A DNA stretch of 63,601 nucleotides, counting the filler, from Octopus bimaculoides (lineage: Eukaryota): assembly GCF_001194135.2 (NCBI RefSeq). It is 4 parts of 4 records of this genome, joined end to end, with 100 filler letters (N's around TTAATTAATTAA, not from the genome) between each part and the next. Parts side by side here need not be neighbours in the genome. Positions count along the whole stretch, not along the records: positions 1 to 26,988 come from NC_068981.1; 3 more parts are not named here. One strand, 5' to 3'. The position numbers and the translations under genes are program-made. Within the stretch, counting starts at the first letter, position 1. The number at the start of each line of letters is the position of its first letter. Below the pieces are notes generated by a model that did not search any database, was not told the DNA's origin, and saw only the letters and a program-made list of their open reading frames with translations. Shown one piece after another: positions 135 to 20,680 of the stretch.

Positions 135-1001
135 CAGAGTGTTCCGACTAAATTTAGTTATATTTGTCTTTTGTTTCAGGAAAAGCTTGATGTACTAGTG
201 AACAGTCAACGGAATTCAAGAGCAAAAAATTAAAGTTATAGTTAAGATGTTAGCTGGCATGTAGAACTGGAGTCCCTCTGAATATTGGAAAAGAGGTAAC
301 TATATCATGATTATTCGCACCAAGTAGGAAATGCTGACATTATGAATGCTGCCCAGTGCTTTGTGGACACTGAAAAGGCTGTAAACTTAACATGAACAAC
401 TACAACAGAGACAGAGACTACGAAGTCGTGAAAAGCAGGATGGGACACAGCATGCATTCTAATCGCATCCACACACCACCAACTGGTGAACAGGGATTAG
501 GTTCAGTACCGACGGCTTTGTGAAGCTGGTGGAGGCTGTGGCCAAACCCTGACTGGAAAACGTTGCTGCTAAAGGGACATACATGTGGCATGAGTATTCG
601 TCTACTTGCCATACGTACGGAATAAATCAGAAGCGGTTGTCAGCGAATTTCTGCGACTTCATTAGCCTCAATTTCTGGCCTGCTAATTCCCCCAATTGTA
701 ATCCAATAGATTATTATCTGTGGGGCACATTCGAGAAACATCAAGGCCGAGCTGCTGGTCAAAATCAAGGAGTTGTTTGAAGATCTTTTCAAGGACACAG
801 TGAAGCACGCACCTACCAAGTTCTGGAGCCGTTTTAAGGTCGTGGCGGAAGCTCAGCTCGGCTACTTTGAGTAAACTGTGATATCTTAGCCATAACCTAG
901 TTAATACTGTTTGATTTAAAAAAACAAATACTTTTATATTGGGATAGGATGTCTTTTCTTTTCCTTTTATGCAAACTGTCAAATTTAGCTCAAACACTCT
1001 G
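135..1001 (+). mobile_element. Internally deleted IS630/Tc1/mariner element (maT/rosa-like C-terminus)
   Basis: TIRs CAGAGTGTTccgaCTAAATTT (135) and AAATTTAGctcaAACACTCTG (to 1001), TA on both sides; remnant peptide NFWPANSPNCNPIDYYLWG. Confidence 0.8.
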
Positions 1002-1456
1002 TATACATGTGTTTGTATGCATGTATTTTTGTGTGTATGTATGTGTAACAGAATAGTCTTTTATTGTAAAAGTGGGGATATTTTCAATGGCAAGAGTGTA
1101 TGGAGTGATAAGTCAAATGTTGGAAGTAAACACTTTTAATTATCTCATCGACATTGTTTCAAACATTTTAATAAACATCCTTGAAATATATAAGTACTTC
1201 AACATTTTAAGGATTGACTTCTCACTTTTGGTTTTACTTAGCCAGCTCATCTTACATCATACATATACAGGAGTTGATCAGATAGGATGTATAAGTATAC
1301 GCAGTTATATATATATATGTATATGTAAAAACTACATATATATCTAGAAATAACAAGACAAATGAAATACTTCATGTAAAATACAATGGTTTAACGACAC
1401 GGTAACAAAAATACTTATTTACTTTCGGCTTCATATTCAAATACTGAGTAATATTT

Positions 1457-4058
1457 TTGTGTTTTACTATTCTTTTCAGATTTTTATGTCTTCAAATGCG
1501 TTTTGGCACTTTACTGACAAATTCCATTTTACTTCTTTCTTCTTTTGTAAATCGTTTAATGGTGTTCTCAGTTTATGTATATTTGGAATGTACTGTTGAT
1601 AGTAATTTACTAGGCCAAGAAAAGCTTGTAATGTCGGTATATTCGTTGGAGGAAGCATATTCTTGATTGCGTCTTCTCTCGACGTCTTCCATTCTCATCT
1701 ATGATTTGACCCAGGTATTTGATTTTAGGCAAAAAAAAAAAAAAAAAAAAAAATTCACACTTCTCTTCACCGAGTGTGAAACCATAATCCTTAATTTCTT
1801 TAAAGACACACTTCACGTATTCGATATGCTAATTCTGCGACTCGCTTTTGATTAACACTTCATCAAGGTAAGGAATAGCAAATTGATAGTCTGCCAACAT
1901 CGCGTCCATCACCTGTTGAAATATTGCAGGTGCTACCTTCAGTTCAAAAGGTAGTCTATTGAATTTGTATAGATCCCCGTGCGAGTTGACCGTTAACAGC
2001 TTTGAGCATTTTTATCTACTTTGATTTGTAGATACGCGTCAGATAGATCAAGTTTTGAAAATATTTTCCTCTGTTTAGTTTTGTAAAAGTATTTTCTGGG
2101 GTCTGCAGAGGATAATGGTTCATTTTTAAACAGTCATTTAAACCGGTCGAAAAATCGGCTCACAACCTAATTTTGTTTCATTTTTATTTTTTGTGCATAC
2201 AGTCGGAGCTGCCCATTTCGCGTACTCCACTTTTTCAATGATTCCGTTTTTGTCGATCTGTCCAACTCATCATCCACTTGCTTTATTGCCGCAAAGGCAC
2301 TTTCTTATTAGGTTTGAACACAGGTGTAACGTTATCATCTAATTCAAAACACTCTTCAGTCTATGTGCATAGACCTAGTTTGTCCGAAAGTACTTGCGGA
2401 AACATTTAAAAATATTTTCGCTTTAACTTTTCAGACGAATCATTTTTTAGAAGGACGACCATCTACGTATTTACAATAAAGATTTACGGGGAGATCCCAT
2501 AAATCGAATAATTCTAACCAATCGGTACCAAACAGATCGGTTGCATTTTTAACGACGAAGACTTTTTGGTATGCATGTTTTCCCTCGAAATGTGACATTA
2601 GTCCACATTTCGCCTATGAAATGTAATTTGTCGTCCATCACGCTACTAGCAGATCTCGCTGTCTTTCTCAACATAAGTTTCCCTATTTTATTCCATGTGT
2701 CCATATTTACTCTTGAAACATCACATCCAGTATCCAATTAAAGTTTAATATGTATTCCATTTATTTTTGTGTACGAATTTTCTTATTTTGGAGTCGATTT
2801 TTGTTTCTGCTGAGAGCACTCTAGGATTTTTAACGTTTGATCTTCATAATTTTGTTTTGCAGTCTGAACTCTCGTGACCAATTCTTTTGCAACTGTAACA
2901 TTTTTGATTTTTAAACGGACAATCTTTTCTGACATTTATGCCCCTACACCCATAACATGGATTAGGACGTTGCTCTCTTTTCTGGTTGTATTTTTCCGGT
3001 CGGCATATCAGCATTTTCAAGGCATCCTCTTCTTGAACTTCTTCTACTCCGTGTTTCAAGTTTACCATCCTTTGACATTCTTCTGCCATGGACTGTAAGC
3101 TTAGTTCTTGGCTCGCTTGTTTGAATTTAGAAAGAATTCTTGCCTGAATTTCTGTATCTTCGCTTACTGTAAGGTCTTGTATGAAAATAAGACACTTGAA
3201 CATCTCAGGTGTAAGTACTTTGAATTTAAAACTTTCAAACATCCTACTGACCGTTCCTGCGTCTGTGATAAAATCATCATTCTCTTTTATCGTTATATTC
3301 GAACATTGTATTCGAGTGTTCAATAGTAAAGTTTTATCACCGAATATGTTAGGCAGTAATTCTGTTGTTTCTTTAAAACACATTTCATTGTATTTTTGGG
3401 GCAATATGGAATTACGGTAACGTTCATGCTCTAATGGCGCTAATTTTCGCAATAACAATCTCATTTTTTGTTTGCCCGACCATGATTTGCAATGTTGCTT
3501 AAAAATCTCGTACCTCTGTAGTACGATGCACAAGTGAGACCCTCCTCTGGATTCATTATTCGAGTTCGAAACGCTGTCTGTCGAAAATGAACTTAACTAA
3601 TTTTTGAATTTCTTTGAATATAGCTCTAATAATTGTTGTTGTAGTTGTTGCTGTAATAGTTGTTTCTGCAATTCCCGTGACTGCTCTTGTTGCTTTTGCA
3701 ACTGTGCTATGGAAGCTAATAGGCCTTCCAATATTTGACAAGTTCTATCACGAAGAAATTGTTAAATAACCAATGTGAGCTTCGAAACACTCGTCGCCAG
3801 ATGTTGTGACGTAATTTGTTACGCACTATAAATAACCCGACAACAGTAAAAACAATGTAACGAACTAACAAATCTCTTTACGAACCAACAATTAATATTC
3901 CATGTGACTAACCAATCGACACCTTCCGACTTAGCTGCGAATTAACACCAACTTCACTCGACTCTGAACACTTTGAACACACTCGCATCTTTACTATTTA
4001 TACTTTACTCGGACCACTCTGTCTTTTGCAAGGGGGCGTCGTAACTCTCATCACAGCA
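1457..4058 (-). mobile_element. Degenerate Ty3/gypsy (Mag-like) LTR retrotransposon: 5' LTR, PBS, gag, protease, RT; 3'-truncated before RNase H/integrase
   Basis: gag ORF 2844-3533 with two CCHC-type knuckles (CYGC..., CYSCKRIGHESSDC); protease DTG (2549-2737); RT remnants LDLSDAYLQ, PAIFQQVMD, YLDE, IKYLGQII, FLGLVNYY; frameshifts and stops. Confidence 0.9.
3802..4058 (-). repeat. 5' LTR of the gypsy element, with adjacent primer-binding site at 3790-3799
   Basis: Termini TGTTGTGA...TCACAGCA (imperfect inverted). Minus strand reads ...CACAACA-TC-TGGCGACGAG, complementary to the 3' end of tRNA-Ser(GCU). Homologous to the LTR at 48999-49224. Confidence 0.75.
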
Positions 4059-4183
4059 AAAACCAACACCCCTACGTGTGTTTGTGTTTGAGTGTGTGTG
4101 TGTGTGTGTGTGCGTGTGTGTGTCAGTGAGTGTGTGTATGTGTGTATATATGTGTGTGTTCAGGCACAAAAAAATATATATGT

Positions 4184-4221
<38 letters not shown>

Positions 4222-4254
4222 ACACATGTATGTATGTATGTATATATATTCTAT

Positions 4255-4445
4255 ACCTGTTTCAGTCATTTGACTGCGGCCATGCTGGAGAAGCGCCTTT
4301 AATCGAACAAATCAACTACAGGACTTATTCTTTGCAAGCCTAGTATTTATTCTATCGGTCTCTTTTCCCGAGCTGCTAAGTTACAGGGACGTAAACACAC
4401 CAGCATCGGTTGTCAAGCGATGGTGGGGCGACAAATACAGACACG
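4255..4445 (-). mobile_element. SINE family A, 3' part
   Basis: Matches the 3' half of other copies (GTTTCAGTCATTTGACTGCGGCCATGCTGG...CACCAGCATCGGTTGTCAAGCG). Confidence 0.8.
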
Positions 4446-4849
4446 CGAATGGACACACACACACACACATACGCAGACACACACACATTTATATATATGC
4501 GCATGTATATTGTTGTGTCTAGGGAGGGTCATTATGCGTCTATTTGTTTCAACACACGAATTCACATAAAAATCTTGCAAACCAGATACAAACTATATAT
4601 ATATGTATATATANNNNNNNNNNNNNNNNNNNNNNNNNNNNNNNNNNNNNNNNNNNNNNNNNNNNNNNNNNNNNNNNNNNNNNNNNNNNNNNNNNNNNNN
4701 NNNNNNNNNNNNNNNNNNNNNNNNNNNNNNNNNNNNNNNNNNNNNNNNNNNNNNNNNNNNNNNNNNNNNNNNNNNNNNNNNNNNNNNNNNNNNNNNNNNN
4801 NNNNNNNNNNNNNNNNNNNNNNNNNNNNNNNNNNNNNNNNNNNATATAC

Positions 4850-6218
4850 ACACACAAGCACCCAAAACCACGCTAATGGTTTAGGAGTGAAATTTTATGA
4901 TTTCTCGGTTTTCTGTGAATCGATTTTGATAAATTTTTTCCCAGCTGGTTTGCACACTATGGCAACAACATTGTTATGGTTTCATTATTCTGTGTAACGT
5001 CCTCTCATTTTTATTTCAGATTCTTCAGTTTTAGGGTGAACCACGCAAATAGTGTCTCTCCTCTCTAAGAACAATGGGACGTAGAAAAGGCCTTAACGAT
5101 GCAGAGAAGTCTTTCATCATCAAGGTACGTGCTAAACGCACCTGTCTTCATGTCATTGCGGAAAAGTTAGGTCGTCATGTGAACACGAAGAAACGATTCC
5201 TGAAGGACCCTTCGCCAATGAAGCAACGATCCGATTATGGGACCTCCAAGCCTGTGACACCTAGAGATTTAAGGAATATTGGACAGAAGTTACGTGGGAA
5301 ACCTGGACAAAAAAAGCAAAGCTGTTTTCACCGCCTCTGGACTTCCTCATGTACCGAAAACCTCCAGAAATCACATTTTCAGAACTATGGCTTCCATGCG
5401 ATAACCTCCGAAACTGCCTCCTTTAACAGGAGTTTGAAGCTTCAATGGGTACAAAAGTACATGACGTTAGACATGAGTTGTGTTGTGTTCACTGACGAAA
5501 CCAGGGCGACCTTCGACGCACCTGACGGTTGGGAAAATGGTTGGGTCAATTCTGGAATGAGTGTCACCAACGTTTACGACGTCAACAATAAGGTGGAGGA
5601 GTCACGTTGTGGGATGGTATCATTGGGACAGACTTCTTGGTCCAGTGAGGGTGCCTGAAGGGTTAAAGTGACCGCAGCCGCCTACTGCAATCTCCCGAAG
5701 GAGGTCTTGAGTCCCTGGCTAGATGACGTACTGCTGTCACTTCTAAGAAATCTCGTATTCATGAATGCCAACGATCACCCAAACATTACTAGGAGTCTCA
5801 CAGCATACAAGGTGAAAGGTCGATGGTGTGGCCGCCAGCATCACTGGATCTCAACCCTATCGAAAATCTTTGGCCCATCATTAAACAAGATGTTTTTGCC
5901 GATGGATGCCAATTTATGTCGAAAGATGATTTAAGGGCGACCATCAAAGCTGCAGCAGAGGCAGCCCAACCTGCTACTATTAAGAAATTGACAGATTCCA
6001 TGACTAATAGGGGTTTTCAAGTTATCCGTCGAAATGGCGCTCACGTGGCTAAATAATTCATTATGTCAATAAATGTTATAATATTAATATATGATTTTCT
6101 GTTAAATATATACTTAATATATGCTTAATATGTATCCTCACCCTTTATTTTCTGAACAAAAAAAGAAAAAAAATGTCAAGATAGGCTTTTTTTTATTCAA
6201 AAGCTATTAGCGTAGTTC
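4850..6218 (+). mobile_element. Degenerate Tc1-family transposon (DD34E-type transposase pseudogene 5074-6056)
   Basis: HTH-like N-terminus, VFTDET, WPPASLDLNPIENLW, with frameshifts; imperfect TIR-like match AAACCACGCTAATGGTTT (about 4864) vs reverse complement of AAAGCTATTAGCGTAGTTC (to 6218). Both ends are next to gaps. Confidence 0.85.
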
Positions 6219-9149: not shown

Positions 9150-9203
9150 TTAACTAAAATTATCTATATTTCTTTTATTTTAGGCATGAAGATTTCTACA
9201 TAA
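9150..9203 (+). promoter_or_regulatory. Putative 3' splice site (TAG 9181-9183) and 5-codon uORF (ATG 9186 to TAA 9203) just upstream of the TLR start
   Basis: TAACTAA branch-like motif, pyrimidine tract TTTCTTTTATTT, TAG; then ATG AAG ATT TCT ACA TAA, ending 2 nt before the TLR ATG at 9206. Confidence 0.45.
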
Positions 9204-9205
9204 AA

Positions 9206-11456
9206 ATGAAGAGGATATTCATTATTGCTTTTGCTTACTTCATGGAAATGTTTATTAAAGTGACTGCAATTTGTCAAACAAACTGCCCTGATGTTTGCAA
9301 CTGTACTGAGATTAAATTCAACCGGTGTACTGTAATCTGTACAGATCAAAATCTAACTCAATTACCCGATTCTTTTCCAAAGAATACTACGTCAATAGAT
9401 TTAAGTCGAAATCGTATTAAAAGTATTTCAAAGAATAGTTTGAGACATTTGAATTTATTAGAGGTGCTAAAACTTGACGATAATCTCCTTGAATATTTAC
9501 AACCGACCACCTTTCAAGGTTTGTGGTCTTTGAGAGAACTCTCGTTAGAGTACAACCGACTAACTATGACTTATATATCCTTTCCTATAAACCTGTTCCA
9601 AAATTTAACAAGAGTGAAAATTCTGAAATTACGAGGTAACTTATTAAACACATCTACGACCTACATCGATAAAACTATTTCTCATTTAACTTCACTGGAA
9701 CAATTATATATGACAGGTACTAAAAATTCTTATTTTGGAGAGGCATATCTAAAACTGTCAAAGTTAAAGTATGTTAGCTTTGCTACAAAACGGAACAGCT
9801 CAGATATATCTTTTCTCACGGACAATGACTTCAGAAATACACGGCATATTGTCTCTTTGAATCTCAGTTATTCTCAAATAACTTCAATGGACGTAGAAAC
9901 TTTTAGGTATTTAAATAATCTGAGAGTTGTAGATATTTCATATAATAATTTTCACGTTAGATTCATGCATTTCTTCAAAAATTTCCTGTCAAGTTATCAT
10001 CTTGAATATCTTGTTCTCAACAATATCAATGTTAGGAATAACCTTGGAATGCCATTATTTGCGGCGGAAGCATCTTATTTAAAACATACATCGCTGAAAA
10101 GATTTGAGTTTAATTATAACAGACTAGAATATATAGAGCCCAATTTTATTTCTTCCTTACCCAAAACATTGGAATACGCATATTTGAAAAATAATATATT
10201 AACATATGGAAAATATTTGTGTGAAATCAAGACTTTATCCAACATTAAATTAATCGACATTAGTACGACATTATCACATAGAAACCTTCCATTATTTCGT
10301 TATAAATTATTCAATAGGGATATTACTTACAGCTTTACAATCTCCAAAACTCTTAAAACACTCTTACTACAAGGTTGCCACTATCAATTTCCGATACCAC
10401 CATTCCATATAAAACATGCAAATGCGATAAGATTAATTAATGCAACGAATAATTTATTTTGTCCATGGAGTGGCCCAGTTCGAGGCTTAGAACAATTACA
10501 GATTCTGGATTTAAGTCACAACCAATGCAATAATATCAGTAACGAATTCTTCNNNNNNNNNNNNNNNNNNNNNNNNNNNNNNNNNNNNNNNNNNNNNNNN
10601 NNNNNNNNNNNNNNNNNNNNNNNNNNNNNNNNNNNNNNNNNNNNNNNNNNNNNNNNNNNNNNNNNNNNNNNNNNNNNNNNNNNNNNNNNNNNNNNNNNNN
10701 NNNNNNNNNNNNNNNNNNNNNNNNNNNNNNNNNNNNNNNNNNNNNNNNNNNNNNNNNNNNNNNNNNNNNNNNNNNNNNNNNNNNNNNNNNNNNNNNNNNN
10801 NNNNNNNNNNNNNNNNNNNNNNNNNNNNNNNNNNNNNNNNNNNNNNNNNNNNNNNNNNNNNNNNNNNNNNNNNNNNNNNNNNNNNNNNNNNNNNNNNNNN
10901 NNNNNNNNNNNNNNNNNNNNNNNNNNNNNNNNNNNNNNNNNNNNNNNNNNNNNNNNNNNNNNNNNNNNNNNNNNNNNNNNNNNNNNNNNNNNNNNNNNNN
11001 NNNNNNNNNNNNNNNNNNNNNNNNNNNNNNNNNNNNNNNNNNNNNNNNNNNNNNNNNNNGCCGGCTTCCTTTGATTATAACCTATCTTAACCACAGTTGT
11101 TCATCATTTATCGGTATAATTATCACTGTAGCATGTCTTATTGTGCTTCTGGGTTGCTTTTCTTTCGGAGCTCTTGTTTACCATTTTAGATGGAAACTAC
11201 GATATTTGTATTACATGATCCGAGAACGATACGCATATCAGAGAATACAAACTGGAGAATATCTTTATGACGCTTTTGTATCTTATGCAGAAGAAGATCG
11301 AGGTTGTGTTTTTGAATATCTAATTCCAGAACTTGAAGAAAAGGATACGTTTAAACTGAATATCCATCATCGAGATTTTCCCGCAGGTAAACAGATTGCT
11401 GAAAATATATTGTCTGCTATCCAATCCAGTCGAACATGTCTTATTTTACTAAGCAG
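9206..11456 (+). CDS. TLR: Toll-like receptor, coding exon 1 (signal peptide, LRRNT, LRRs, N gap 10553-11059, end of LRRCT, TM helix, N-terminal half of TIR)
   Basis: MKRIFIIAFAYF leader; CPDVCNC...C LRRNT; repeated LxxLxLxxN motifs (LEVLKLDDNLL, LRELSLEYNRL, LQILDLSHNQC). After the gap: hydrophobic FIGIIITVACLIVLLGCFSFGALVY, RWKLRYLYY, TIR box1 YDAFVSY and box2 HHRDFPAG. Ends at donor AG|GTAAAT (11456/11457). Family is recognised, orthologue number is not. Confidence 0.95.
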
Positions 11457-11959
11457 GTAAATGTTCACCGTTTATTAGTATTCTATCAAAATGTATTAAT
11501 TTTAGTTCTAATCTTTTCCCTTTATTTTCTCTTGTGAACAAAGCTTCCTTACGTTTTGATAAATTTTAGCCATCTTTTAAAGAAATTTAAAACGTAAATC
11601 TCTACACAGATTACTTGCAGTGTTTGAATAAATTATTTCTTCTCAAACAGAAGATTTTTTGTAAATTGCGTTTTATATTTTTACCCTTTTATTGGTTCTA
11701 ATATTTTGACTGTGTAGAGACACTGTCAGAAAGGACAGAGAGAGAAATGGGAAGGAAAATAAAGAGAGTTTGGTAGTGAAGAAGGTGGTAACTCAGGTTA
11801 ATTTTGATCAAATATTTGCGAATGGAGTTTGGAAGAGAAACTGAGAGCCAGTCACAATACATAAACAGACATAGACTTAAACGCGCGCACGCGCACACAC
11901 ACTTATGCGCTCTTGCGCTTCATATGGAAGATATAAGTTCCACTAGTGAGAGAAATCTG

Positions 11960-12295
11960 TCTACTCACTCCATTGTGGTCTTGTGATGCCGTCCTTGTTA
12001 ATGCGACGCCTTCTTTTGAGGCTGACGCACTTTCAGAAATATTTAAATCACTGCAATGGTGTGAACGACGGCGACGAAAACAAGGGCGAACTGGTGTGGG
12101 CGGCCTTTACGCAACATGTCTTTCCGCAGCCACTCTTATTGACGGAGCTGCAATCATGGGTCAAACGGAGACCAAGATTGGGTTTTTGGTATCTAGAATG
12201 TTGCCAGGTGCTCACTGCATTGTACCAGCTGGAAAAACTGTTAGCAGAAAAACAACCGAAGATTTCTATAGGGGGCTAGTTGAGGTTATCTCTTA
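11960..12295 (+). mobile_element. L1/Tx1-like LINE ORF2 fragment inside the TLR intron
   Basis: AFTQHVFPQ...TELQSW and TTEDFYRGLVEVI align with TVNFYSGLVEFM of the zinc-knuckle-bearing fragment at 23723-24290. Confidence 0.5.
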
Positions 12296-12831
12296 GTTTG
12301 TCTCTTTGGGACAGCAAGGAATATCAGGAGGGTTCTAAGCACTCGAAAGGCTACCGAAAACTGGTGGATATCTAAGGTTACAGGTAGTAATCCACTACCT
12401 ACATAAATCCTATCAGGAATGAGACCGAACCTGAGTCAAATCAAAATGATAATAATAATTGTGATAATGATTTCTTTTATTTGCCACCAGGGCCCTAAAT
12501 GTGGAGGACAGTATCAAAGGACGAGATACAACATACAAAATACAAAACAGGTGGGGTTTATGTCGATCAAGGGAAGGCACTACAACGTTAAAGGATATAA
12601 CAAAACGATATAGACCAGCCCTGGGCTGGTCTATAATTATTTCCTCTGTAGTTTCTTCTTTAGCTGCAGCTTCGTTCTTTTTATCCCTTACTGCTTGTTT
12701 AATTTGGTCAAGTTTGTTACTGTCTATATAAGGCCTTACTTCAAGGTGTTTCTGTCTTCAGTTTAAGTAGGTTTGTACAGTATTAGATTTATTTGTGGGA
12801 AAATATATGGCATGGTAGAAGGCCGTAAGAA

Positions 12832-13211
12832 CATTATTATTATTATTATTATTATTGTTCAGTAGTTTTATTTTTATAACGTGCTTTCACTTCACTACCG
12901 AGTGCAGCTCTGTGCGCCTTGGGAATGTGCTGTGGTTTGCTGTGGTGCTCTTATGTTTACTGTATTGAAAGTGTTTTGCGTAGGATGTGTGCAGTGCCCA
13001 GTAGTGCAATTTTCTGTATGTTATATATATTTGTAAGTCCTGGTGTTTTTGTTATGTATTTGTCTGAATATTTTTTTTATTATACCTAAGGCACCTACTA
13101 TGATAGGAATTGATTCTGTTTTTAGATTCCACATTCGAGTTATCTCTATTTCCAGGTCTTTGTATTTTGAAAGTTTTTCCATTTCTTTTAGAGAAACGTT
13201 GTCATCTGCTG
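12832..13211 (-). mobile_element. R4/Dong-clade LINE 3' end (restriction-like endonuclease region plus (AAT)n tail)
   Basis: NVSLKEMEKLSKYKDLEIEITRMW...IPIIVGALG; tail at 12832-12856; truncated by a gap. Confidence 0.75.
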
Positions 13212-14274
13212 NNNNNNNNNNNNNNNNNNNNNNNNNNNNNNNNNNNNNNNNNNNNNNNNNNNNNNNNNNNNNNNNNNNNNNNNNNNNNNNNNNNNNNNNN
13301 NNNNNNNNNNNNNNNNNNNNNNNNNNNNNNNNNNNNNNNNNNNNNNNNNNNNNNNNNNNNNNNNNNNNNNNNNNNNNNNNNNNNNNNNNNNNNNNNNNNN
13401 NNNNNNNNNNNNNNNNNNNNNNNNNNNNNNNNNNNNNNNNNNNNNNNNNNNNNNNNNNNNNNNNNNNNNNNNNNNNNNNNNNNNNNNNNNNNNNNNNNNN
13501 NNNNNNNNNNNNNNNNNNNNNNNNNNNNNNNNNNNNNNNNNNNNNNNNNNNNNNNNNNNNNNNNNNNNNNNNNNNNNNNNNNNNNNNNNNNNNNNNNNNN
13601 NNNNNNNNNNNNNNNNNNNNNNNNNNNNNNNNNNNNNNNNNNNNNNNNNNNNNNNNNNNNNNNNNNNNNNNNNNNNNNNNNNNNNNNNNNNNNNNNNNNN
13701 NNNNNNNNNNNNNNNNNNNNNNNNNNNNNNNNNNNNNNNNNNNNNNNNNNNNNNNNNNNNNNNNNNNNNNNNNNNNNNNNNNNNNNNNNNNNNNNNNNNN
13801 NNNNNNNNNNNNNNNNNNNNNNNNNNNNNNNNNNNNNNNNNNNNNNNNNNNNNNNNNNNNNNNNNNNNNNNNNNNNNNNNNNNNNNNNNNNNNNNNNNNN
13901 NNNNNNNNNNNNNNNNNNNNNNNNNNNNNNNNNNNNNNNNNNNNNNNNNNNNNNNNNNNNNNNNNNNNNNNNNNNNNNNNNNNNNNNNNNNNNNNNNNNN
14001 NNNNNNNNNNNNNNNNNNNNNNNNNNNNNNNNNNNNNNNNNNCAGTAAACAAATGTCACCTTATTTTGCTGGCTATGATGGAAAATGTCAACTGTCTACA
14101 GCCAGCAGACTAAGGTGACATTTGTTTACTGGTCATGCTTCAAGAACCCTGCGAAGAATTCTTGCAATGCAGATTTTTGTAGGCGTTCTACTTTCACACT
14201 TGCACTATTATTTCTCAGCCATGTTAGTAGTTGAGTGCTGATACTTCCAAGTGTACCAATTACTNNNNNNNNNN

Positions 14275-14275
<1 letters not shown>

Positions 14276-14320
<45 letters not shown>

Positions 14321-14888
14321 TATGAAAACTCACAGCTTATTTTGCTGGCTATGATGGAAAATGTCAACTGTCTACAGCCAGCAGACTAAGGTGACATTTG
14401 TTTACTGGTCATGCTTCAAGAACCCTGCGAAGAATTCTTGCAATGCAGATTTTTGTAGGCGTTCTACTTTCACACTTGCACTATTATTTCTCAGCCATGT
14501 TAGTAGTTGAGTGCTGATACTTCCAAGTGTACCAATTACTATTGGTATCACGCCTACTCTCTTCATTGACCACAACTTTCGTATTTCCCACTTTAAATCG
14601 TCATAGTTGTTTATTTTTTCTTCTTTCATATTGATCCTGTTATAACCGGAGTATGGTATGTTGATTATCATACATGTTCCCTCTTTTCTATTCACCACAA
14701 CAATGTCCGGTTTACAAATCTTTAGGAATAGCTCCTAATGCACCCATAAGTACTGGGATACATTTTATCTCCACTTTCTATAGTCTCTCTAATTCAATGG
14801 CTAGGTCCTGGTACTTTTCTATTTCTTTTATATCTCTCATTAATTTTTTTCATCCTTTGGGGTTGTAAAGTCAATTATGTGGCACCTT

Positions 14889-14946
<58 letters not shown>

Positions 14947-16500
14947 GAAATCAGGCCTTCTATCGTCTATCACTCTGTCACTCTGAATGTTAAAGTCCCA
15001 CAACATCTTATATTTTCTTACTTTCTAGTATTTTACTAGGTTCATATTCATACCATTTATCAGTATGGTCAAATCCTAGCTTTCTACATAACTCCCAGTG
15101 GATTACTCTCCCTAGGTTGTCATACCTTTTCTTGTATTCCTTCTGTGCCAGCATGCTACATTCACTTACTATATGAGTATCACGTTCCTCTTTTGATTTG
15201 TATAACCTTCATTGGCAATCTACTTGGATTTTGTCTATTTTGGCTTTTATCCAATTAGTCCTTAATGCTTGATATTGTGCAGCTACTAACAAACATTCTC
15301 TTTCCCTCTTCAGCTTTCCCTCTTCTTTACTTTCTGCAACAGTAACCATGTCTCACTACTATTTGCTGCAACTGTTTTTGGAAATATACCAAGCAACACC
15401 TTCTCCTGCCAGTCAGATAATTTCTCTTCTTCTTTCTGGTTTTTAACTTCGTTTGGGTTTTTGGTTTCCTTATGTCTTGCTGTGACTCTTGCAGCTTTTA
15501 GTAAGTTTTCTTCACTGTCATCTACATAGGAGTCTATATCTACTCTAGCTAACTCGACATACTCTTCTACTGGTATTAATCCTCTTCCGCCCTCCTTTCT
15601 TGGTAGGCATAATCTTACTACTCCTGCCCTTAGGTGGAGTCCTCCATTCATATGGAATTCCTTCCTAGTTCTTCTGTCTATCTCTGCTAATTCAGTCTTT
15701 GTCCAATCTACAAAAGCTGCTGAGTAACTAAGTAATGATAATGCCCAAGTATTTGCAACCTTCATTAGATTCAGCTTTGACTTCATTAGCTTCTTCACCC
15801 TTCTAATGTACTCCTTCTCAATTTTCGTTTTCATTTCTGTATTTATTACCCTGTCAGATTCTAATACACTTAGATACTTGTAACTCTGTCCTCCTTCCAA
15901 TGATTTTAATGTCTGGCCATCTGGTAATCGGTTGCCTCCGCTGTTGACTACCTGTCCCCTTCTCATGACTAATATTGCACACGTATCTCTGTTAAATTCC
16001 ATGCCTGTAACTTTGCAGAAGGAATCTGTCTCTTTTCATTCTTCCTAAAATATTCAGATCATCCATGTAGAGCAAATGATTAATTTTTCCGTTATTTCTA
16101 AACTGATACCTGCCTTTGATTTCCTGAGGGTGATCAAACATGACACAAATATTAAAGGGGATAGCAAGTCCCCTTGGAGAATTTCTCTTTGATATTAACT
16201 TTCCCTACGAGTGCGTCACCTGAGTAGAGATCAACTTTCCATTTCTTCTTGCTAAAGCTAATTAATTCTCTTATGTTGTCTGCTATACTGAATATACTCA
16301 AACATTCACTTATCCATGAGTATGAGATCATGTCATAGGCTTTCCTATAATCTATCCATGCTATTATGAGATTATTTTCTAGCTTTTACTTCATGTAGAA
16401 CTGCTTTGTCTGTATATAATAGATCATGCGTTCCTCTAGCCTTCTTCCTGCAACCTTTCTGTTCTGGTTGTAAATTCTGGTTGTCAAGGTGCTCGCACAC
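14276..16500 (-). mobile_element. 5'-truncated R4/Dong-clade LINE (RT, C-terminal domain, RLE, (AAT)n tail) inside the TLR intron
   Basis: DLLSPLIF, HLLYMDD, YKYLSVLES, RLCLPRKEGGRGL, EEKINNYDDLKWEIRKLW...VIPIVIGTLG; tail 14276-14318; multiple disruptions. Confidence 0.85.
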
Positions 16501-16521
16501 TATTTTTCTTCTTCTTCTTAC

Positions 16522-16561
<40 letters not shown>

Positions 16562-16915
16562 GTTAGTCTCTGTCATCGGACGGTATAGCTTAAAGAGGCA
16601 ATCCCAGACTGTTGCCACCACCACATGAACTATAACGAGGGGTTGGAATTTGTGGCGGTCCACGAGGATGCTACCGTATAATGTGAGCTCAGGTGGTAAA
16701 GAACTCATACAATACTATTTTTTCTCTCCTTTAAAGAGAAAGAGATAGAGATCTCTTTCTCTTTCTCCCTCTTTCTCTCCTTCTCTTACCCTCTCGATCT
16801 TTCTTTCTCCCCGCTATGTCTTCACAGTCCCCTCCAGATTTTACCAGCAAATTATGATAATATTTGTTTCGTATTTTAAGTTGTATCATCAATGTATAAT
16901 ATCGTTTAATTTCAG

Positions 16916-17150
16916 GAGCTTTTTGTCAAGTGAGTGGTGTATGTTTGAATATAACATGGCTAAAATGGAATGTATCCACACTGAGAGAGATTTGGTAATT
17001 GTCATAATGCTCGAAGAACTCTCTGTAGACATTCTACCTTTACAATTACAACATCAAATCAAAACACAGAGTTATATATGTTTTCCAACGGAGAACGCGA
17101 CAAGTGATGTTTTCTGGAATAATCTTAAAAAGTCTATACGAGACGGTTAA
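16916..17150 (+). CDS. TLR: Toll-like receptor, coding exon 2 (C-terminal half of TIR)
   Basis: Acceptor TTTAATTTCAG|G at 16915/16916. AG+G restores Arg, giving LLSR|SFLSSEWCMFEYNMA...VIMLEELS...YICFP...FWNNLKKSIRDG*, which contains the FLxSxWC motif and box3 FW. Phase 2 matches the exon 1 donor. Confidence 0.9.
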
Positions 17151-19039: not shown

Positions 19040-20680
19040 CATGGGAAAAGCATGTAGTAGAGAGATCAAGTGCAACTTTGATCCTGAGATTTGTTAATTG
19101 AAATACCAAAACTTAGTTTGACTGGAAACTGAAGCGTCTTAAATTCAAATGTAAGATCAGCAGGTATGACATGAATTTTTGGAATAAAGACATTTTCACC
19201 TTTGTGACTATCTGTTATGATTGTTGCCTGTAGGATAAGGGGTTTCATGGAAGTAACAATTAAGCGAGTTCCATTACACATGTGAGATGGTTCAAGATTC
19301 CCAAGCAACATAACAGGAGCACCCAGTTTTAGTGTCAAGTTATGCTCTGGTATCCCAATGGGTTTTTAAGTGTGTTCAGAAATTCAACAGGGTATTGAAC
19401 AACCTGATCTTGATCAACTGTTATCAATTGATCGAAAAGTCATTTCTGATATATCTGTTAACTTTTGAAGAAGTTCGTGATTGAGTTTATCAATCATTTC
19501 ATTTGTTGGAGCTAGCATAGCTCTTTCACATAGCCAGTTTAAATCAGCGTAATTTACAGATAAATTAGGAAATACTTTATACATAAGATCCCTAAGCGAA
19601 AGTGTCATTTAATCGCATGTAATTTCATGTAGTCGAAGTCTTGAGTTGAGTGCTAATATCTCATTACCAATCTTAAGAAGCTCGTATAATTACCTTGTAG
19701 AAATACTCTGATGTTGCTTGTTAGATGACATTTTTTTCACATGTCTCCAAAGACACGATTTTTTGAATCATGCATTGACCTCAACAGCTTTTGATCTTTT
19801 TGGGATAACTGGCAATGCTTGACGAATATATCCTGCAAGAAAAACTGTTACTAATCCCATGAGCGTGCTATTTTTTTTTTGTCTTGCAGGGTACGGTCGA
19901 GTACCTCTGGAGCACAACGGTGTGACAGTGCACTCATCCCAAACAATGCGGCAAGTTTGTTGGAGATATGTTGCAATTGCAGAGCTTTTAGAAATGTTGC
20001 ACATTTGAGATTCTTTCAAGGTTTAGAGGGAGCTTAAACATAGAATGAGCAGTTCTTCCCTCATCGAAGAAGGTAGCTGTAATACCAGAAGATGCAACAC
20101 TGGAAGATTTTATTTCGTCCCAATTAGGACTGCAGGTGAAAGGGACAAAAAGATCTGGTTTTCCATACATCCTGTGAATGTTGATGGAAGGATTATAACT
20201 TGGCCCATGTTTTGAATATCACCATCTGTCCTCAGAGCATCTTGGGGATGAACATAATTTTTAGCTCTTAATTTTTTTTATTGTTATGAATGTAGAAAAG
20301 ACGCATATTCTCAACTTTAACATAAATATCAACCAGGTATTGCTGAAATAGATCACGATACATGTGTAATTGATTTGATTGTTCTGGTCTCAACATCAGT
20401 GGGTAAGAATAGAAAGTCATTTGATGACACATTTTTGCTTGCAATTGGCTCTCCTGTTGCAGGTTCAATCTGTGGAATATTGAAATGATACCCATCTTGT
20501 CCATTCCACAGAATAAGAGCATCATAAGAGGGATGAGTCTCTGAAACACGTTTAAGATTGTTATCTCGAGCACGAATGAGAATATCAGGATTTTCATGGG
20601 GATCACCTACCATAAAGATGGCTACTTCATTAGCCGTGGGTTCATAAAAAACGGCGTAAAATGTCCTCTACTATAGTTTA
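19040..20680 (-). mobile_element. Internally deleted Helitron RepHel remnant
   Basis: RRFYEPTANEVAIFMVG, YLVDIYVKVE, YGKPDLFVPFTCSPNWDEI (Rep motif 1), GITAT...GRTAHSMFKLPL, IVWDEC, WLCERAMLAPTN, LKLGAPVMLL.NL..CNGTRL, FPVKLSFGISINKSQ. Confidence 0.9.

What the first reader, a model, noticed from the sequence alone, without database searches (positions are those of the whole stretch)
9206..17150. Toll-like receptor whose TIR domain is split by a 5.5-kb retrotransposon-filled intron
Seen: exon 1 ends ...CLILLS-AG|GTAAAT, and 5.46 kb later TTTCAG|G-AGC restores R-SFLSSEWC...FWNNL. The ORF track shows these as unrelated ORFs. The intron holds R4/Dong and Tx1-like LINE pieces. Established: TLR TIR domains are very often encoded within one exon. 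Inference: without splicing, the frame hits TAA straight after the donor (AGG TAA at 11455-11460), so intron retention would give a receptor with half a TIR, a possible decoy or dominant-negative isoform.
Basis: partly seen in the sequence, partly recalled or inferred. Interest (0 to 1): 0.7.

Follow-up and report, generated by a model that had tools for sequence, protein, structure and literature searches.

The report
Octopod Toll-like receptor, intron inside TIR
This is an ordinary, apparently intact Toll-like receptor gene of an octopus-like cephalopod whose signalling (TIR) domain is interrupted by one large, transposon-filled intron; related cephalopod TLR genes share that intron, so it is a lineage trait and not a special feature of this locus.

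Summary
Exon 1 ends at 11456 (…CLILLS-AG|GTAAAT). Exon 2 starts at 16916 (TTTCAG|G) and runs to the TAA at 17148-17150. The join gives …SRTCLILLSRSFLSSEWCMFEYNMA…FWNNL…, a complete TIR domain (Pfam TIR 64.5 bits; end-to-end match to the human TLR2 TIR with no gap at the join; AlphaFold pLDDT 86.8).

The intron lies exactly between strand βC and helix αC. A phase-2 GT..AG intron at the same codon occurs in four other cephalopod-type TLR loci:
- Argonauta hians orthologue, 8,994 nt
- Argonauta paralogue, 9,242 nt
- Octopus bimaculoides paralogue, donor only
- an unnamed ENA contig, 2,950 nt

Haliotis and another mollusc homologue are uninterrupted there. Exon 2 is under purifying selection (dN/dS about 0.06 against Argonauta).

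The intron holds degenerate antisense LINE copies of the restriction-like-endonuclease type with (TAA)n flanks. This fits R4/Dong. "Tx1-like" was not verified.

The 507-N gap sits inside exon 1 and replaces about 165 codons. The frames across it disagree only because the gap length is an estimate.

The "decoy isoform" idea has no support here. AGG|TAA follows automatically from a consensus donor in phase 2, and no RNA data were available. Interest is low: a correct annotation and a modest evolutionary note.

The parts
9206..10552 (+). Exon 1, first part. Start codon, signal-peptide-like N-terminus, LRRNT and leucine-rich repeats (449 codons, open).
   Evidence: translation. Pfam LRR_8 95.4 bits, plus LRRNT at 20.0 bits, below its 25.8-bit cut-off. 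61% identical to the O. bimaculoides 'toll-like receptor 4, partial' P0014 and 55% to Argonauta P0016. The start aligns with that of P0014/P0015.
10553..11059 (.). Assembly gap inside exon 1. It replaces about 165 codons (last LRRs and the LRR C-terminal cysteine cap). The stated length puts the flanks out of frame.
   Evidence: frame 9206 against frame 11062. P0016 residues 403-567 are unmatched. 172 residues lie between the flanking motifs in P0015, P0016 and P0018.
11062..11456 (+). Exon 1, last part. Juxtamembrane region, transmembrane helix, and the TIR N-half (box 1 YDAFVSYAEED, box 2 / BB loop HHRDFPAG, helix alphaB, strand betaC CLILLS). It ends with AG of a split AGG codon.
   Evidence: Pfam TIR 34.3 bits alone. 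80% identical to Argonauta P0016. AlphaFold elements.
11457..16915 (+). Phase-2 intron of 5,459 nt (841 of them N). Donor GTAAAT, acceptor tttaatttcag. 37% G+C.
   Evidence: Same position in L001, L005, L002 and L006.
14320..16517 (-). Degenerate antisense non-LTR retrotransposon (LINE) ORF2 with frameshifts, stops and an internal (CTA)19. It carries RT motifs (AWIDYRKAYD, QGDLLSPL, YMDD), then a CCHC-like motif, and RRPDFVVV / KPDIVVV restriction-like-endonuclease motifs.
   Evidence: Six-frame reading. Pfam RVT_1 36.9 bits. The endonuclease type and clade are inferred from motifs and flanks.
16518..16565 (.). (TTA)16 microsatellite at the 5' side of the antisense LINE.
14275..14319 (.). (ATT)15 microsatellite, which reads (AAT)n on the LINE strand, at the 3' end of the antisense LINE.
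13024..13211 (-). C-terminal tail of a second antisense LINE of the same type (...KYKDLEIEITRMWNLKTESIPIIVGALG...). It runs into the 13212-14042 gap.
   Evidence: It resembles the tail at 14405-14734.
16916..17150 (+). Exon 2. G completes the AGG codon, followed by the TIR C-half (alphaC SFLSSEWCMFEYNMAKME, betaD, alphaD, betaE, and box 3 FW in alphaE) and the stop TAA at 17148-17150.
   Evidence: 71% identical to Argonauta exon 2. The acceptor context is conserved with L001 from 25 nt upstream. dN/dS 0.06. It is the only C-half TIR match in the window.

Best explanation
The region 9206-17150 is a two-coding-exon gene for a single-cysteine-cluster (vertebrate-type) Toll-like receptor of an octopod-like cephalopod. 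Exon 1 encodes the signal peptide, LRR ectodomain, transmembrane helix and the first half of the TIR domain. Part of exon 1 is lost in an assembly gap. A 5.46-kb phase-2 intron follows. Exon 2 encodes the second half of the TIR.

The intron is an old, constitutively spliced feature of this cephalopod TLR clade. It sits at the betaC/alphaC boundary of the TIR. Homologous Haliotis and other mollusc genes lack it and have an AG|R proto-splice sequence at that site. In each lineage the intron has independently grown by insertion of transposable elements. Here these are antisense, decayed, restriction-like-endonuclease LINEs sitting in (TAA)n microsatellites.

Shown: the splice signals, the complete TIR after joining, conservation of the position, and purifying selection on exon 2. 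Inferred: that the gene is expressed and spliced this way in vivo, that the missing codons are in the gap, and that the intron was gained in the cephalopod lineage and not lost elsewhere.
For: - Splice signals and restored frame are read directly.
- Pfam TIR is 64.5 bits for the spliced product against 34.3 and nothing for the halves.
- phmmer gives an end-to-end match to the human TLR2 TIR 1FYW, 89.9 bits, with no indel at the join.
- The AlphaFold2 model has pLDDT 86.8 and a full five-strand TIR. The junction residue R132 lies between betaC (123-130) and alphaC (132-154). Foldseek top hits are the human TLR1/TLR2/TLR10/TLR6 TIR domains, TM 0.77-0.84 on the target.
- The Argonauta hians model P0016 (778 aa) is contiguous across the same junction. 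Its gene has exon 1 at 3001-5096 and exon 2 from 14091.
- The same AG|GT donor codon occurs in L001, L005, L002 and L006, and matching acceptors in L001, L005 and L002 restore complete TIRs.
- Haliotis rufescens L004 and ENA contig L003 are uninterrupted across the site.
- dN/dS against Argonauta is 0.10 for exon 1b and 0.06 for exon 2.
- The intron carries RVT_1 on the minus strand and microsatellite flanks.
Against: - No transcript evidence for this locus could be consulted. No protein identical to the window's product was found in the public protein collection.
- About 165 codons of the ectodomain are unread, so intactness of the whole gene is unproven. At the stated gap length the frames disagree.
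- dS is saturated, so the dN/dS values are rough.
- The polarity of the intron change (gain or loss) rests on two directly tested intronless outgroup loci. The many contiguous ORFs add to this but were not inspected.
- The organism behind L002 is unknown.
Confidence: 0.88

Rival explanations
1. The intron is used for regulation. Intron retention or intronic polyadenylation gives a membrane receptor that ends at ...LILLSR, with only betaA-betaC of the TIR. This product acts as a decoy or dominant-negative.
For: - An in-frame stop follows the donor directly (AGG TAA). The same holds in L001, L005 and L006.
- AATAAA hexamers lie at 11627 and 11758 in the intron.
- There is a real precedent. Teleost TLR9 genes retain an intron inside the TIR and make TLR9B, a truncated-TIR negative regulator (PMC4425437).
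Against: - TAA or TGA straight after a phase-2 donor is what the GTRAGT consensus gives by itself. L002 has GTATGT, lacks the immediate stop and reads on for 14 codons.
- AATAAA is expected by chance in 37% G+C sequence.
- In the model, three of five strands without alphaC-alphaE are unlikely to fold. This is an inference.
- The truncated public models P0018 and P0017 are gene-caller products, not transcripts.
- No RNA data were available.
Confidence: 0.08
2. The gene is a dead copy. A once continuous TIR exon was broken by transposon insertion, and the 'intron' is only an insertion scar.
For: The interval is largely LINE-derived. The gene has an unread gap. No identical protein is on record.
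Against: - The boundaries are exact GT..AG with a polypyrimidine tract and no target-site duplication.
- The same boundary occurs in four other loci with unrelated intron content and lengths of 2.9-9.2 kb.
- All readable coding sequence is open.
- Exon 2 has dN/dS about 0.06.
Confidence: 0.03
3. A nearer or alternative TIR-completing exon is hidden in the 13212-14042 gap, so 16916 is not the only partner of the 11456 donor.
For: 831 bases are unread. This cannot be excluded by sequence.
Against: - The two known exons already give a complete TIR with no missing residues against intronless homologues and the TLR2 TIR.
- Exon 2 and its acceptor are orthologous to the Argonauta exon 2.
- Both gap flanks are LINE 3' parts: 13024-13211 on one side, and 14057-14264, a 99.5% copy of 14333-14540, on the other. 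This is what a repeat-caused gap looks like.
Confidence: 0.02

Closest known systems
Argonauta hians hypothetical protein Ahia01_000026600 (P0016, 778 aa; locus L001)
   Same: Likely orthologue. 80% identical over the transmembrane helix and TIR N-half, 71% over exon 2, and 55% over the ectodomain. Same two-exon layout, same phase-2 AG|GTAAAT donor and TTTCAG|G acceptor.
   Different: The intron is 8,994 nt and shares no detectable sequence with the window's intron. The public model starts downstream of the conserved N-terminus.
Octopod paralogue group: O. bimaculoides 'toll-like receptor 4, partial' / A0A0L8HND6 (P0014, P0015), O. vulgaris 'toll-like receptor 4' (P0001), Argonauta Ahia01_000022700 (P0018)
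   Same: Same architecture and same intron position. A stretch of the ectodomain (10148-10552) is 88.6% identical in DNA to the O. bimaculoides copy.
   Different: Only 63-69% identical in the TIR, so this is a different paralogue. Most public models are truncated or mis-joined at this intron.
Gastropod and bivalve 'toll-like receptor 4'-named TLRs (Haliotis, Mytilus, Saccostrea; P0002-P0012)
   Same: Same transmembrane-proximal RWKLRYLYY motif and TIR, 37-44% identical. Same receptor class.
   Different: No intron at the betaC/alphaC site in the two loci inspected, Haliotis rufescens L004 and ENA contig L003. The codons there read TCA AGG AAT and TCT AGA AAC.
Teleost TLR9 with an intron in the TIR and the intron-retention isoform TLR9B (PMC4425437)
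   Same: A TLR gene whose TIR is interrupted by an intron. Reading into the intron gives a TIR-truncated receptor.
   Different: In the fish gene the intron lies further C-terminal (TLR9B loses alphaD, betaE, alphaE and part of the DD loop), and the isoform and its negative effect were shown experimentally. Here the position is betaC/alphaC and nothing has been shown.
Human TLR2 / TLR1 / TLR6 / TLR10 TIR domains (1FYW, 7NUX, 4OM7, 2J67)
   Same: Same fold, with boxes 1-3. 30-36% identity over 140-148 columns.
   Different: From my own knowledge, not tested here: these vertebrate genes encode the TIR in one exon.
Restriction-like-endonuclease LINEs (R2/R4/Dong group)
   Same: The intronic element has RT followed by CCHC-like and (R/K)PD-VVV motifs, and (TAA)n on both sides. 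RLE LINEs typically target repeats such as microsatellites (PMC4640811). From my own knowledge, Dong elements target TAA repeats.
   Different: No clade-level phylogeny or repeat library was available. The copy is 5'-truncated, frameshifted and interrupted.

Membership tests
Toll-like receptor (single-cysteine-cluster / vertebrate-type) | N-terminal leucine-rich-repeat ectodomain with an LRRNT cap | tested here: met
   Pfam LRR_8 95.4 bits, LRR_4 and LRR_1. LRRNT scores 20.0 bits, below its 25.8 cut-off, but the CQTNCPDVCNC motif is present.
Toll-like receptor (single-cysteine-cluster / vertebrate-type) | A single LRR C-terminal cysteine cluster before the membrane | not testable with these tools
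   This part falls in the 10553-11059 gap. The orthologue P0016 has it (…NTLKCGCHQSSFLKWL…C…).
Toll-like receptor (single-cysteine-cluster / vertebrate-type) | One transmembrane helix between ectodomain and TIR | tested here: met
   Hydrophobic stretch FIGIIITVACLIVLLGCFSFGALVY. It lies within the long helix at residues 2-41 of the model.
Toll-like receptor (single-cysteine-cluster / vertebrate-type) | Complete cytoplasmic TIR domain with boxes 1, 2 and 3 | tested here: met
   Met only after splicing. Pfam TIR 64.5 bits; TLR2 TIR match 89.9 bits end to end; complete five-strand fold at pLDDT 86.8; Foldseek TLR1/TLR2 TIR.
Toll-like receptor (single-cysteine-cluster / vertebrate-type) | Ligand-dependent signalling through TIR adaptors | not testable with these tools
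   Needs experiments.
Spliceosomal intron (as opposed to an insertion scar) | GT..AG boundaries, polypyrimidine tract, frame restored, position conserved in relatives | tested here: met
Spliceosomal intron (as opposed to an insertion scar) | Junction observed in RNA | not testable with these tools
   No RNA data for this organism. The only indirect support is that the public Argonauta and O. vulgaris models are spliced at the same site.
R4/Dong clade LINE | Reverse transcriptase followed by a C-terminal restriction-like endonuclease | tested here: inconclusive
   RVT_1 36.9 bits. The endonuclease was recognised only by eye from the RRPDFVVV / KPDIVVV and CCHC-like motifs. No profile hit.
R4/Dong clade LINE | Insertion in (TAA)n microsatellites | tested here: met
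   (TTA)16 at 16518-16565 and (ATT)15 at 14275-14319 flank the element.
R4/Dong clade LINE | Placement within the clade by RT phylogeny | not tested
   No reference set of LINE clades was available.
Tx1-like LINE | Recognisable Tx1-type ORF2 or endonuclease sequence in the intron | tested here: not met
   The remaining intron ORFs (11937-12293, 12416-12757 and others) have no Pfam hit. Nothing points to Tx1.

The most novel reading that the evidence does not exclude
The betaC/alphaC intron is a cephalopod-specific gain in one TLR clade. It has been kept for a very long time because alternative 3'-end formation within it (intronic polyadenylation or retention) yields TIR-truncated, membrane-anchored receptors that dampen signalling. 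This would be an invertebrate parallel to teleost TLR9B.
Probability: 0.08. Interest if true: 0.45.

Novelty: new member of a known kind. Interest (0 to 1): 0.2.

Why it matters
There are two modest points.

The first is practical. This intron breaks automated gene models. Of the public models for this cephalopod TLR clade, one stops at the donor (P0018), one reads through it (P0017), one is mis-joined (P0015), and others are partial (P0014, P0001). Counts of "complete" and "TIR-less" TLRs in cephalopod genomes are therefore likely to be distorted. Knowing the AG|GT…AG junction after …LLS allows them to be repaired.

The second is evolutionary. It is a clean case of a lineage-restricted intron inside a domain that is otherwise encoded on one exon in related mollusc genes. 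The intron sits at a secondary-structure boundary and at a proto-splice AG|R sequence, and it has been inflated independently by transposons to 3-9 kb.

Neither point changes how TLRs are understood.

Tried and rejected
- Exact-sequence look-ups of P0001, of the exon-2 ORF and of the intronic RT ORF found no record. The source species of the window could not be named and no transcript contigs were recovered.
- The profile search with cephalopod TIR sequences returned only gastropod and bivalve relatives plus P0018, and no squid or cuttlefish proteins. The age of the intron within cephalopods and the identity of the L002 organism stay open.
- Literature searches for statements on introns within TLR TIR domains in molluscs or cephalopods found nothing specific. 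Only the teleost TLR9 precedent was useful.
- Pfam on the other intron ORFs and on the LINE C-terminal pieces gave no hits, so "Tx1-like" could not be supported.
- The "dead gene split by a transposon" reading was rejected because of conserved GT..AG boundaries and purifying selection.
- A "hidden exon in the gap" is unlikely because the alignment is gapless.
- The immediate stop codon was rejected as evidence for a decoy because the donor consensus produces it.
Full report
**Observation**

Exon 1 ends …TGT CTT ATT TTA CTA AGC AG|GTAAAT, with the last exon base at 11456. Without splicing the frame reads AGG TAA (11455-11460). The acceptor is …cgtttaatttcag|GAGC TTT TTG TCA AGT GAG TGG TGT, with the first exon base at 16916, and the frame closes at TAA 17148-17150. 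Joining 11062-11456 to 16916-17150 gives an open 209-codon frame: …SRTCLILLSRSFLSSEWCMFEYNMAKME…DVFWNNLKKSIRDG*. In the mechanical ORF list the two halves are separate ORFs, 11071-11460 and 16854-17150.

**Assembly gaps**

The window has N runs at 10553-11059, 13212-14042 and 14265-14274.

- The first gap lies inside exon 1. The open frame before it (from the ATG at 9206, 449 codons) and the open frame after it (from 11062) are offset by one base if the gap is taken as 507 N.
- Homology resolves this as far as it can be resolved. Argonauta P0016 residues 1-402 match 9353-10552 and residues 568-699 match 11062-11457, each as a single alignment.
- Three octopod homologues have 172 residues between the motifs that flank the gap, and seven of these are present after the gap. 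About 165 codons (about 493 bases) are therefore missing, close to the 507-base estimate.
- The orthologous loci have no intron in this stretch. Continuity of exon 1 is likely but unproven.
- The other two gaps are intronic.

**Is the join real?**

Four kinds of evidence agree.

- *Domain completeness.* Pfam TIR scores 34.3 bits on the first half, nothing on the second, and 64.5 bits on the spliced product. The spliced TIR matches the human TLR2 TIR (1FYW) end to end at 89.9 bits, with no indel at the join: rtclillsr|sflssewcmfe against hktvfvlse|nfvksewckye.
- *Structure.* An AlphaFold2 model built on 15 sequences has mean pLDDT 86.8 and the full βA-αA-βB-αB-βC-αC-βD-αD-βE-αE order. The junction residue R132 lies between βC (123-130) and αC (132-154). 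Foldseek returns the human TLR1, TLR2, TLR10 and TLR6 TIR domains first (TM 0.77-0.84 on the target).
- *Comparative gene structure.* Four other loci were fetched.
  - The Argonauta hians model P0016 (778 aa) is contiguous across the junction (…CLILLSRNFLASEWC…). Its gene has exon 1 at 3001-5096, an 8,994-nt intron (GTAAAT…TTTCAG) and exon 2 from 14091.
  - A second Argonauta gene (P0018, locus L005) has a 9,242-nt intron at the same codon (GTGAGT…TTTTTACAG).
  - An ENA contig (P0017, locus L002) has a 2,950-nt intron (GTATGT…TTTGCAG). In both L005 and L002, splicing restores a full TIR ending in the FW box.
  - The O. bimaculoides paralogue (L006) has the same AG|GTAAGT donor.
  - The window's acceptor region is alignable with that of Argonauta from 25 nt upstream of the exon. 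The rest of the intron shares nothing with it.
- *Selection.* Against Argonauta, dN/dS is 0.10 for the exon 1 part after the gap and 0.06 for exon 2. dS is saturated, so these values are rough.

Only one C-half TIR match exists in the window.

**Distribution of the intron**

The related Haliotis rufescens locus L004 is colinear with P0016 over one 804-residue alignment that runs through the TIR. The ENA contig L003 encodes the transmembrane helix and TIR in one uninterrupted ORF. At the homologous site they read TCA AGG AAT and TCT AGA AAC, that is AG|R, a proto-splice-like sequence.

Many further bivalve and gastropod relatives were recovered as ORFs covering over 90% of the transmembrane-TIR query, but I did not inspect their loci.

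The simplest reading is an intron gained in the lineage leading to these cephalopod TLRs. This is inferred, and loss elsewhere is not excluded. The organism behind L002 is unknown. Its protein is 47-49% identical to the octopod sequences and 36-37% to the gastropod and bivalve ones.

**What fills the intron**

- On the minus strand, from about 16517 down to 14405, runs a frameshifted LINE ORF2. RT motifs AWIDYRKAYD, QGDLLSPL and YMDD are visible, and the stitched pieces score RVT_1 at 36.9 bits.
- Downstream of the RT come a CCHC-like motif, then RRPDFVVV (interrupted by a (CTA)19 array), and then KPDIVVVNRK…IPIVIGTLG to a stop at 14405.
- These (R/K)PD-VVV motifs are what I recognise from memory as the PD-(D/E)xK restriction-like endonuclease of R2/R4/Dong-type LINEs. 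No profile confirmed this.
- The element is bracketed by (TTA)16 at 16518-16565 and (ATT)15 at 14275-14319. RLE LINEs typically integrate into repeats such as microsatellites (PMC4640811). From my own knowledge, Dong elements target TAA repeats.
- A second tail of the same kind at 13024-13211 (minus strand) runs into the 831-N gap.
- 14057-14264 is a 99.5% copy of 14333-14540 across the 10-N gap. Both flanks of the large gap are therefore LINE 3' parts, as expected for a repeat-caused gap.
- Nothing supported "Tx1-like". The other intron ORFs have no Pfam hit.
- All recognisable LINE pieces are antisense to the gene.

**The decoy idea**

- The stop directly after the donor is real but carries no weight. 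In phase 2, a consensus GTAA or GTGA donor always reads AGG TAA or AGG TGA. Four of the five loci have it. The one with GTATGT does not and reads on for 14 codons, which is why P0017 ends …LLSRYVYYLYSISVVGYS.
- Two AATAAA hexamers lie 170 and 300 nt into the intron. These are unremarkable at 37% G+C.
- A product ending at βC would lack αC, βD, αD, βE and αE, and I would not expect it to fold. This is an inference.
- A true precedent exists. Teleost TLR9 genes with an intron in the TIR make an intron-retention isoform, TLR9B, which still binds MyD88 but fails to recruit IRAK4 and TRAF6 and inhibits signalling (PMC4425437).
- The idea is legitimate but untested here, and it would not be a new principle.

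**Comparison and verdict**

This is a member of the mollusc TLR group that NCBI names "toll-like receptor 4". The likely orthologue is Argonauta Ahia01_000026600. A sister paralogue group is represented by P0014, P0015, P0001 and P0018.

The public Argonauta and O. vulgaris models already splice across this intron, so the gene structure is implicit in existing annotation, although I found no paper that comments on it. The useful by-product is that this intron explains several broken public models.

I rate it a new member of a known kind, with low interest.

Noticed in passing
window 14057-14264 and 14333-14540: Two 208-bp stretches are 99.5% identical in direct orientation, either side of the 10-N gap and an (ATT)15 array. 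This is either a local assembly duplication or two nested LINE 3' ends.
   Followed up: partly
window 9183-9205: A possible acceptor (ttttag|G) lies 22 nt upstream of the TLR start codon. A 5-codon upstream ORF (ATG AAG ATT TCT ACA TAA, 9186-9203) ends 3 nt before the ATG. This suggests a separate 5'-UTR exon and a uORF.
   Followed up: no
window 2844-3533 (-), 5074-5658 (+), 19066-19338 (-), 25519-25950 (-): Other transposon relics surround the gene: a gag-like ORF (DUF7083 plus zinc knuckle), a Tc3-type transposase HTH, a Pif1 2B-domain fragment (Helitron-like) and a mariner-type DDE transposase piece. There are also many (CA)n/(GA)n arrays and further N gaps.
   Followed up: partly
P0018 (L005), P0017 (L002), P0015, P0014 (L006), P0001: Public models of this cephalopod TLR clade are mostly broken. 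P0018 stops at the donor (AGG TGA). P0017 reads through it. P0015 skips the transmembrane helix and the TIR N-half and joins …GR|YFVESKWC. P0001 lacks everything before the TIR. P0014 ends at a 10-N assembly gap, not at the intron.
   Followed up: partly
L006 20425-20670 (minus strand): In the O. bimaculoides chromosome assembly, the C-half TIR exon next to the paralogue lies on the opposite strand. It sits on a 1.2-kb piece between two N gaps and carries an in-frame TAG (…VPHR*LPLP…). Either the scaffold piece is flipped or this is a decayed copy.
   Followed up: partly
window 10148-10552 vs L006 10949-11353: This part of the ectodomain is 88.6% identical in DNA to the O. bimaculoides paralogue, but only 76% identical to the Argonauta orthologue. 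Elsewhere the window is closer to Argonauta. This could reflect gene conversion between paralogues.
   Followed up: no
L004 (Haliotis rufescens) 675-3020: P0016 aligns over 804 residues in one frame, yet the public model P0002 covers only the last 342 codons. The Haliotis 'short TLR4' models may be truncated annotations of full-length receptors.
   Followed up: no
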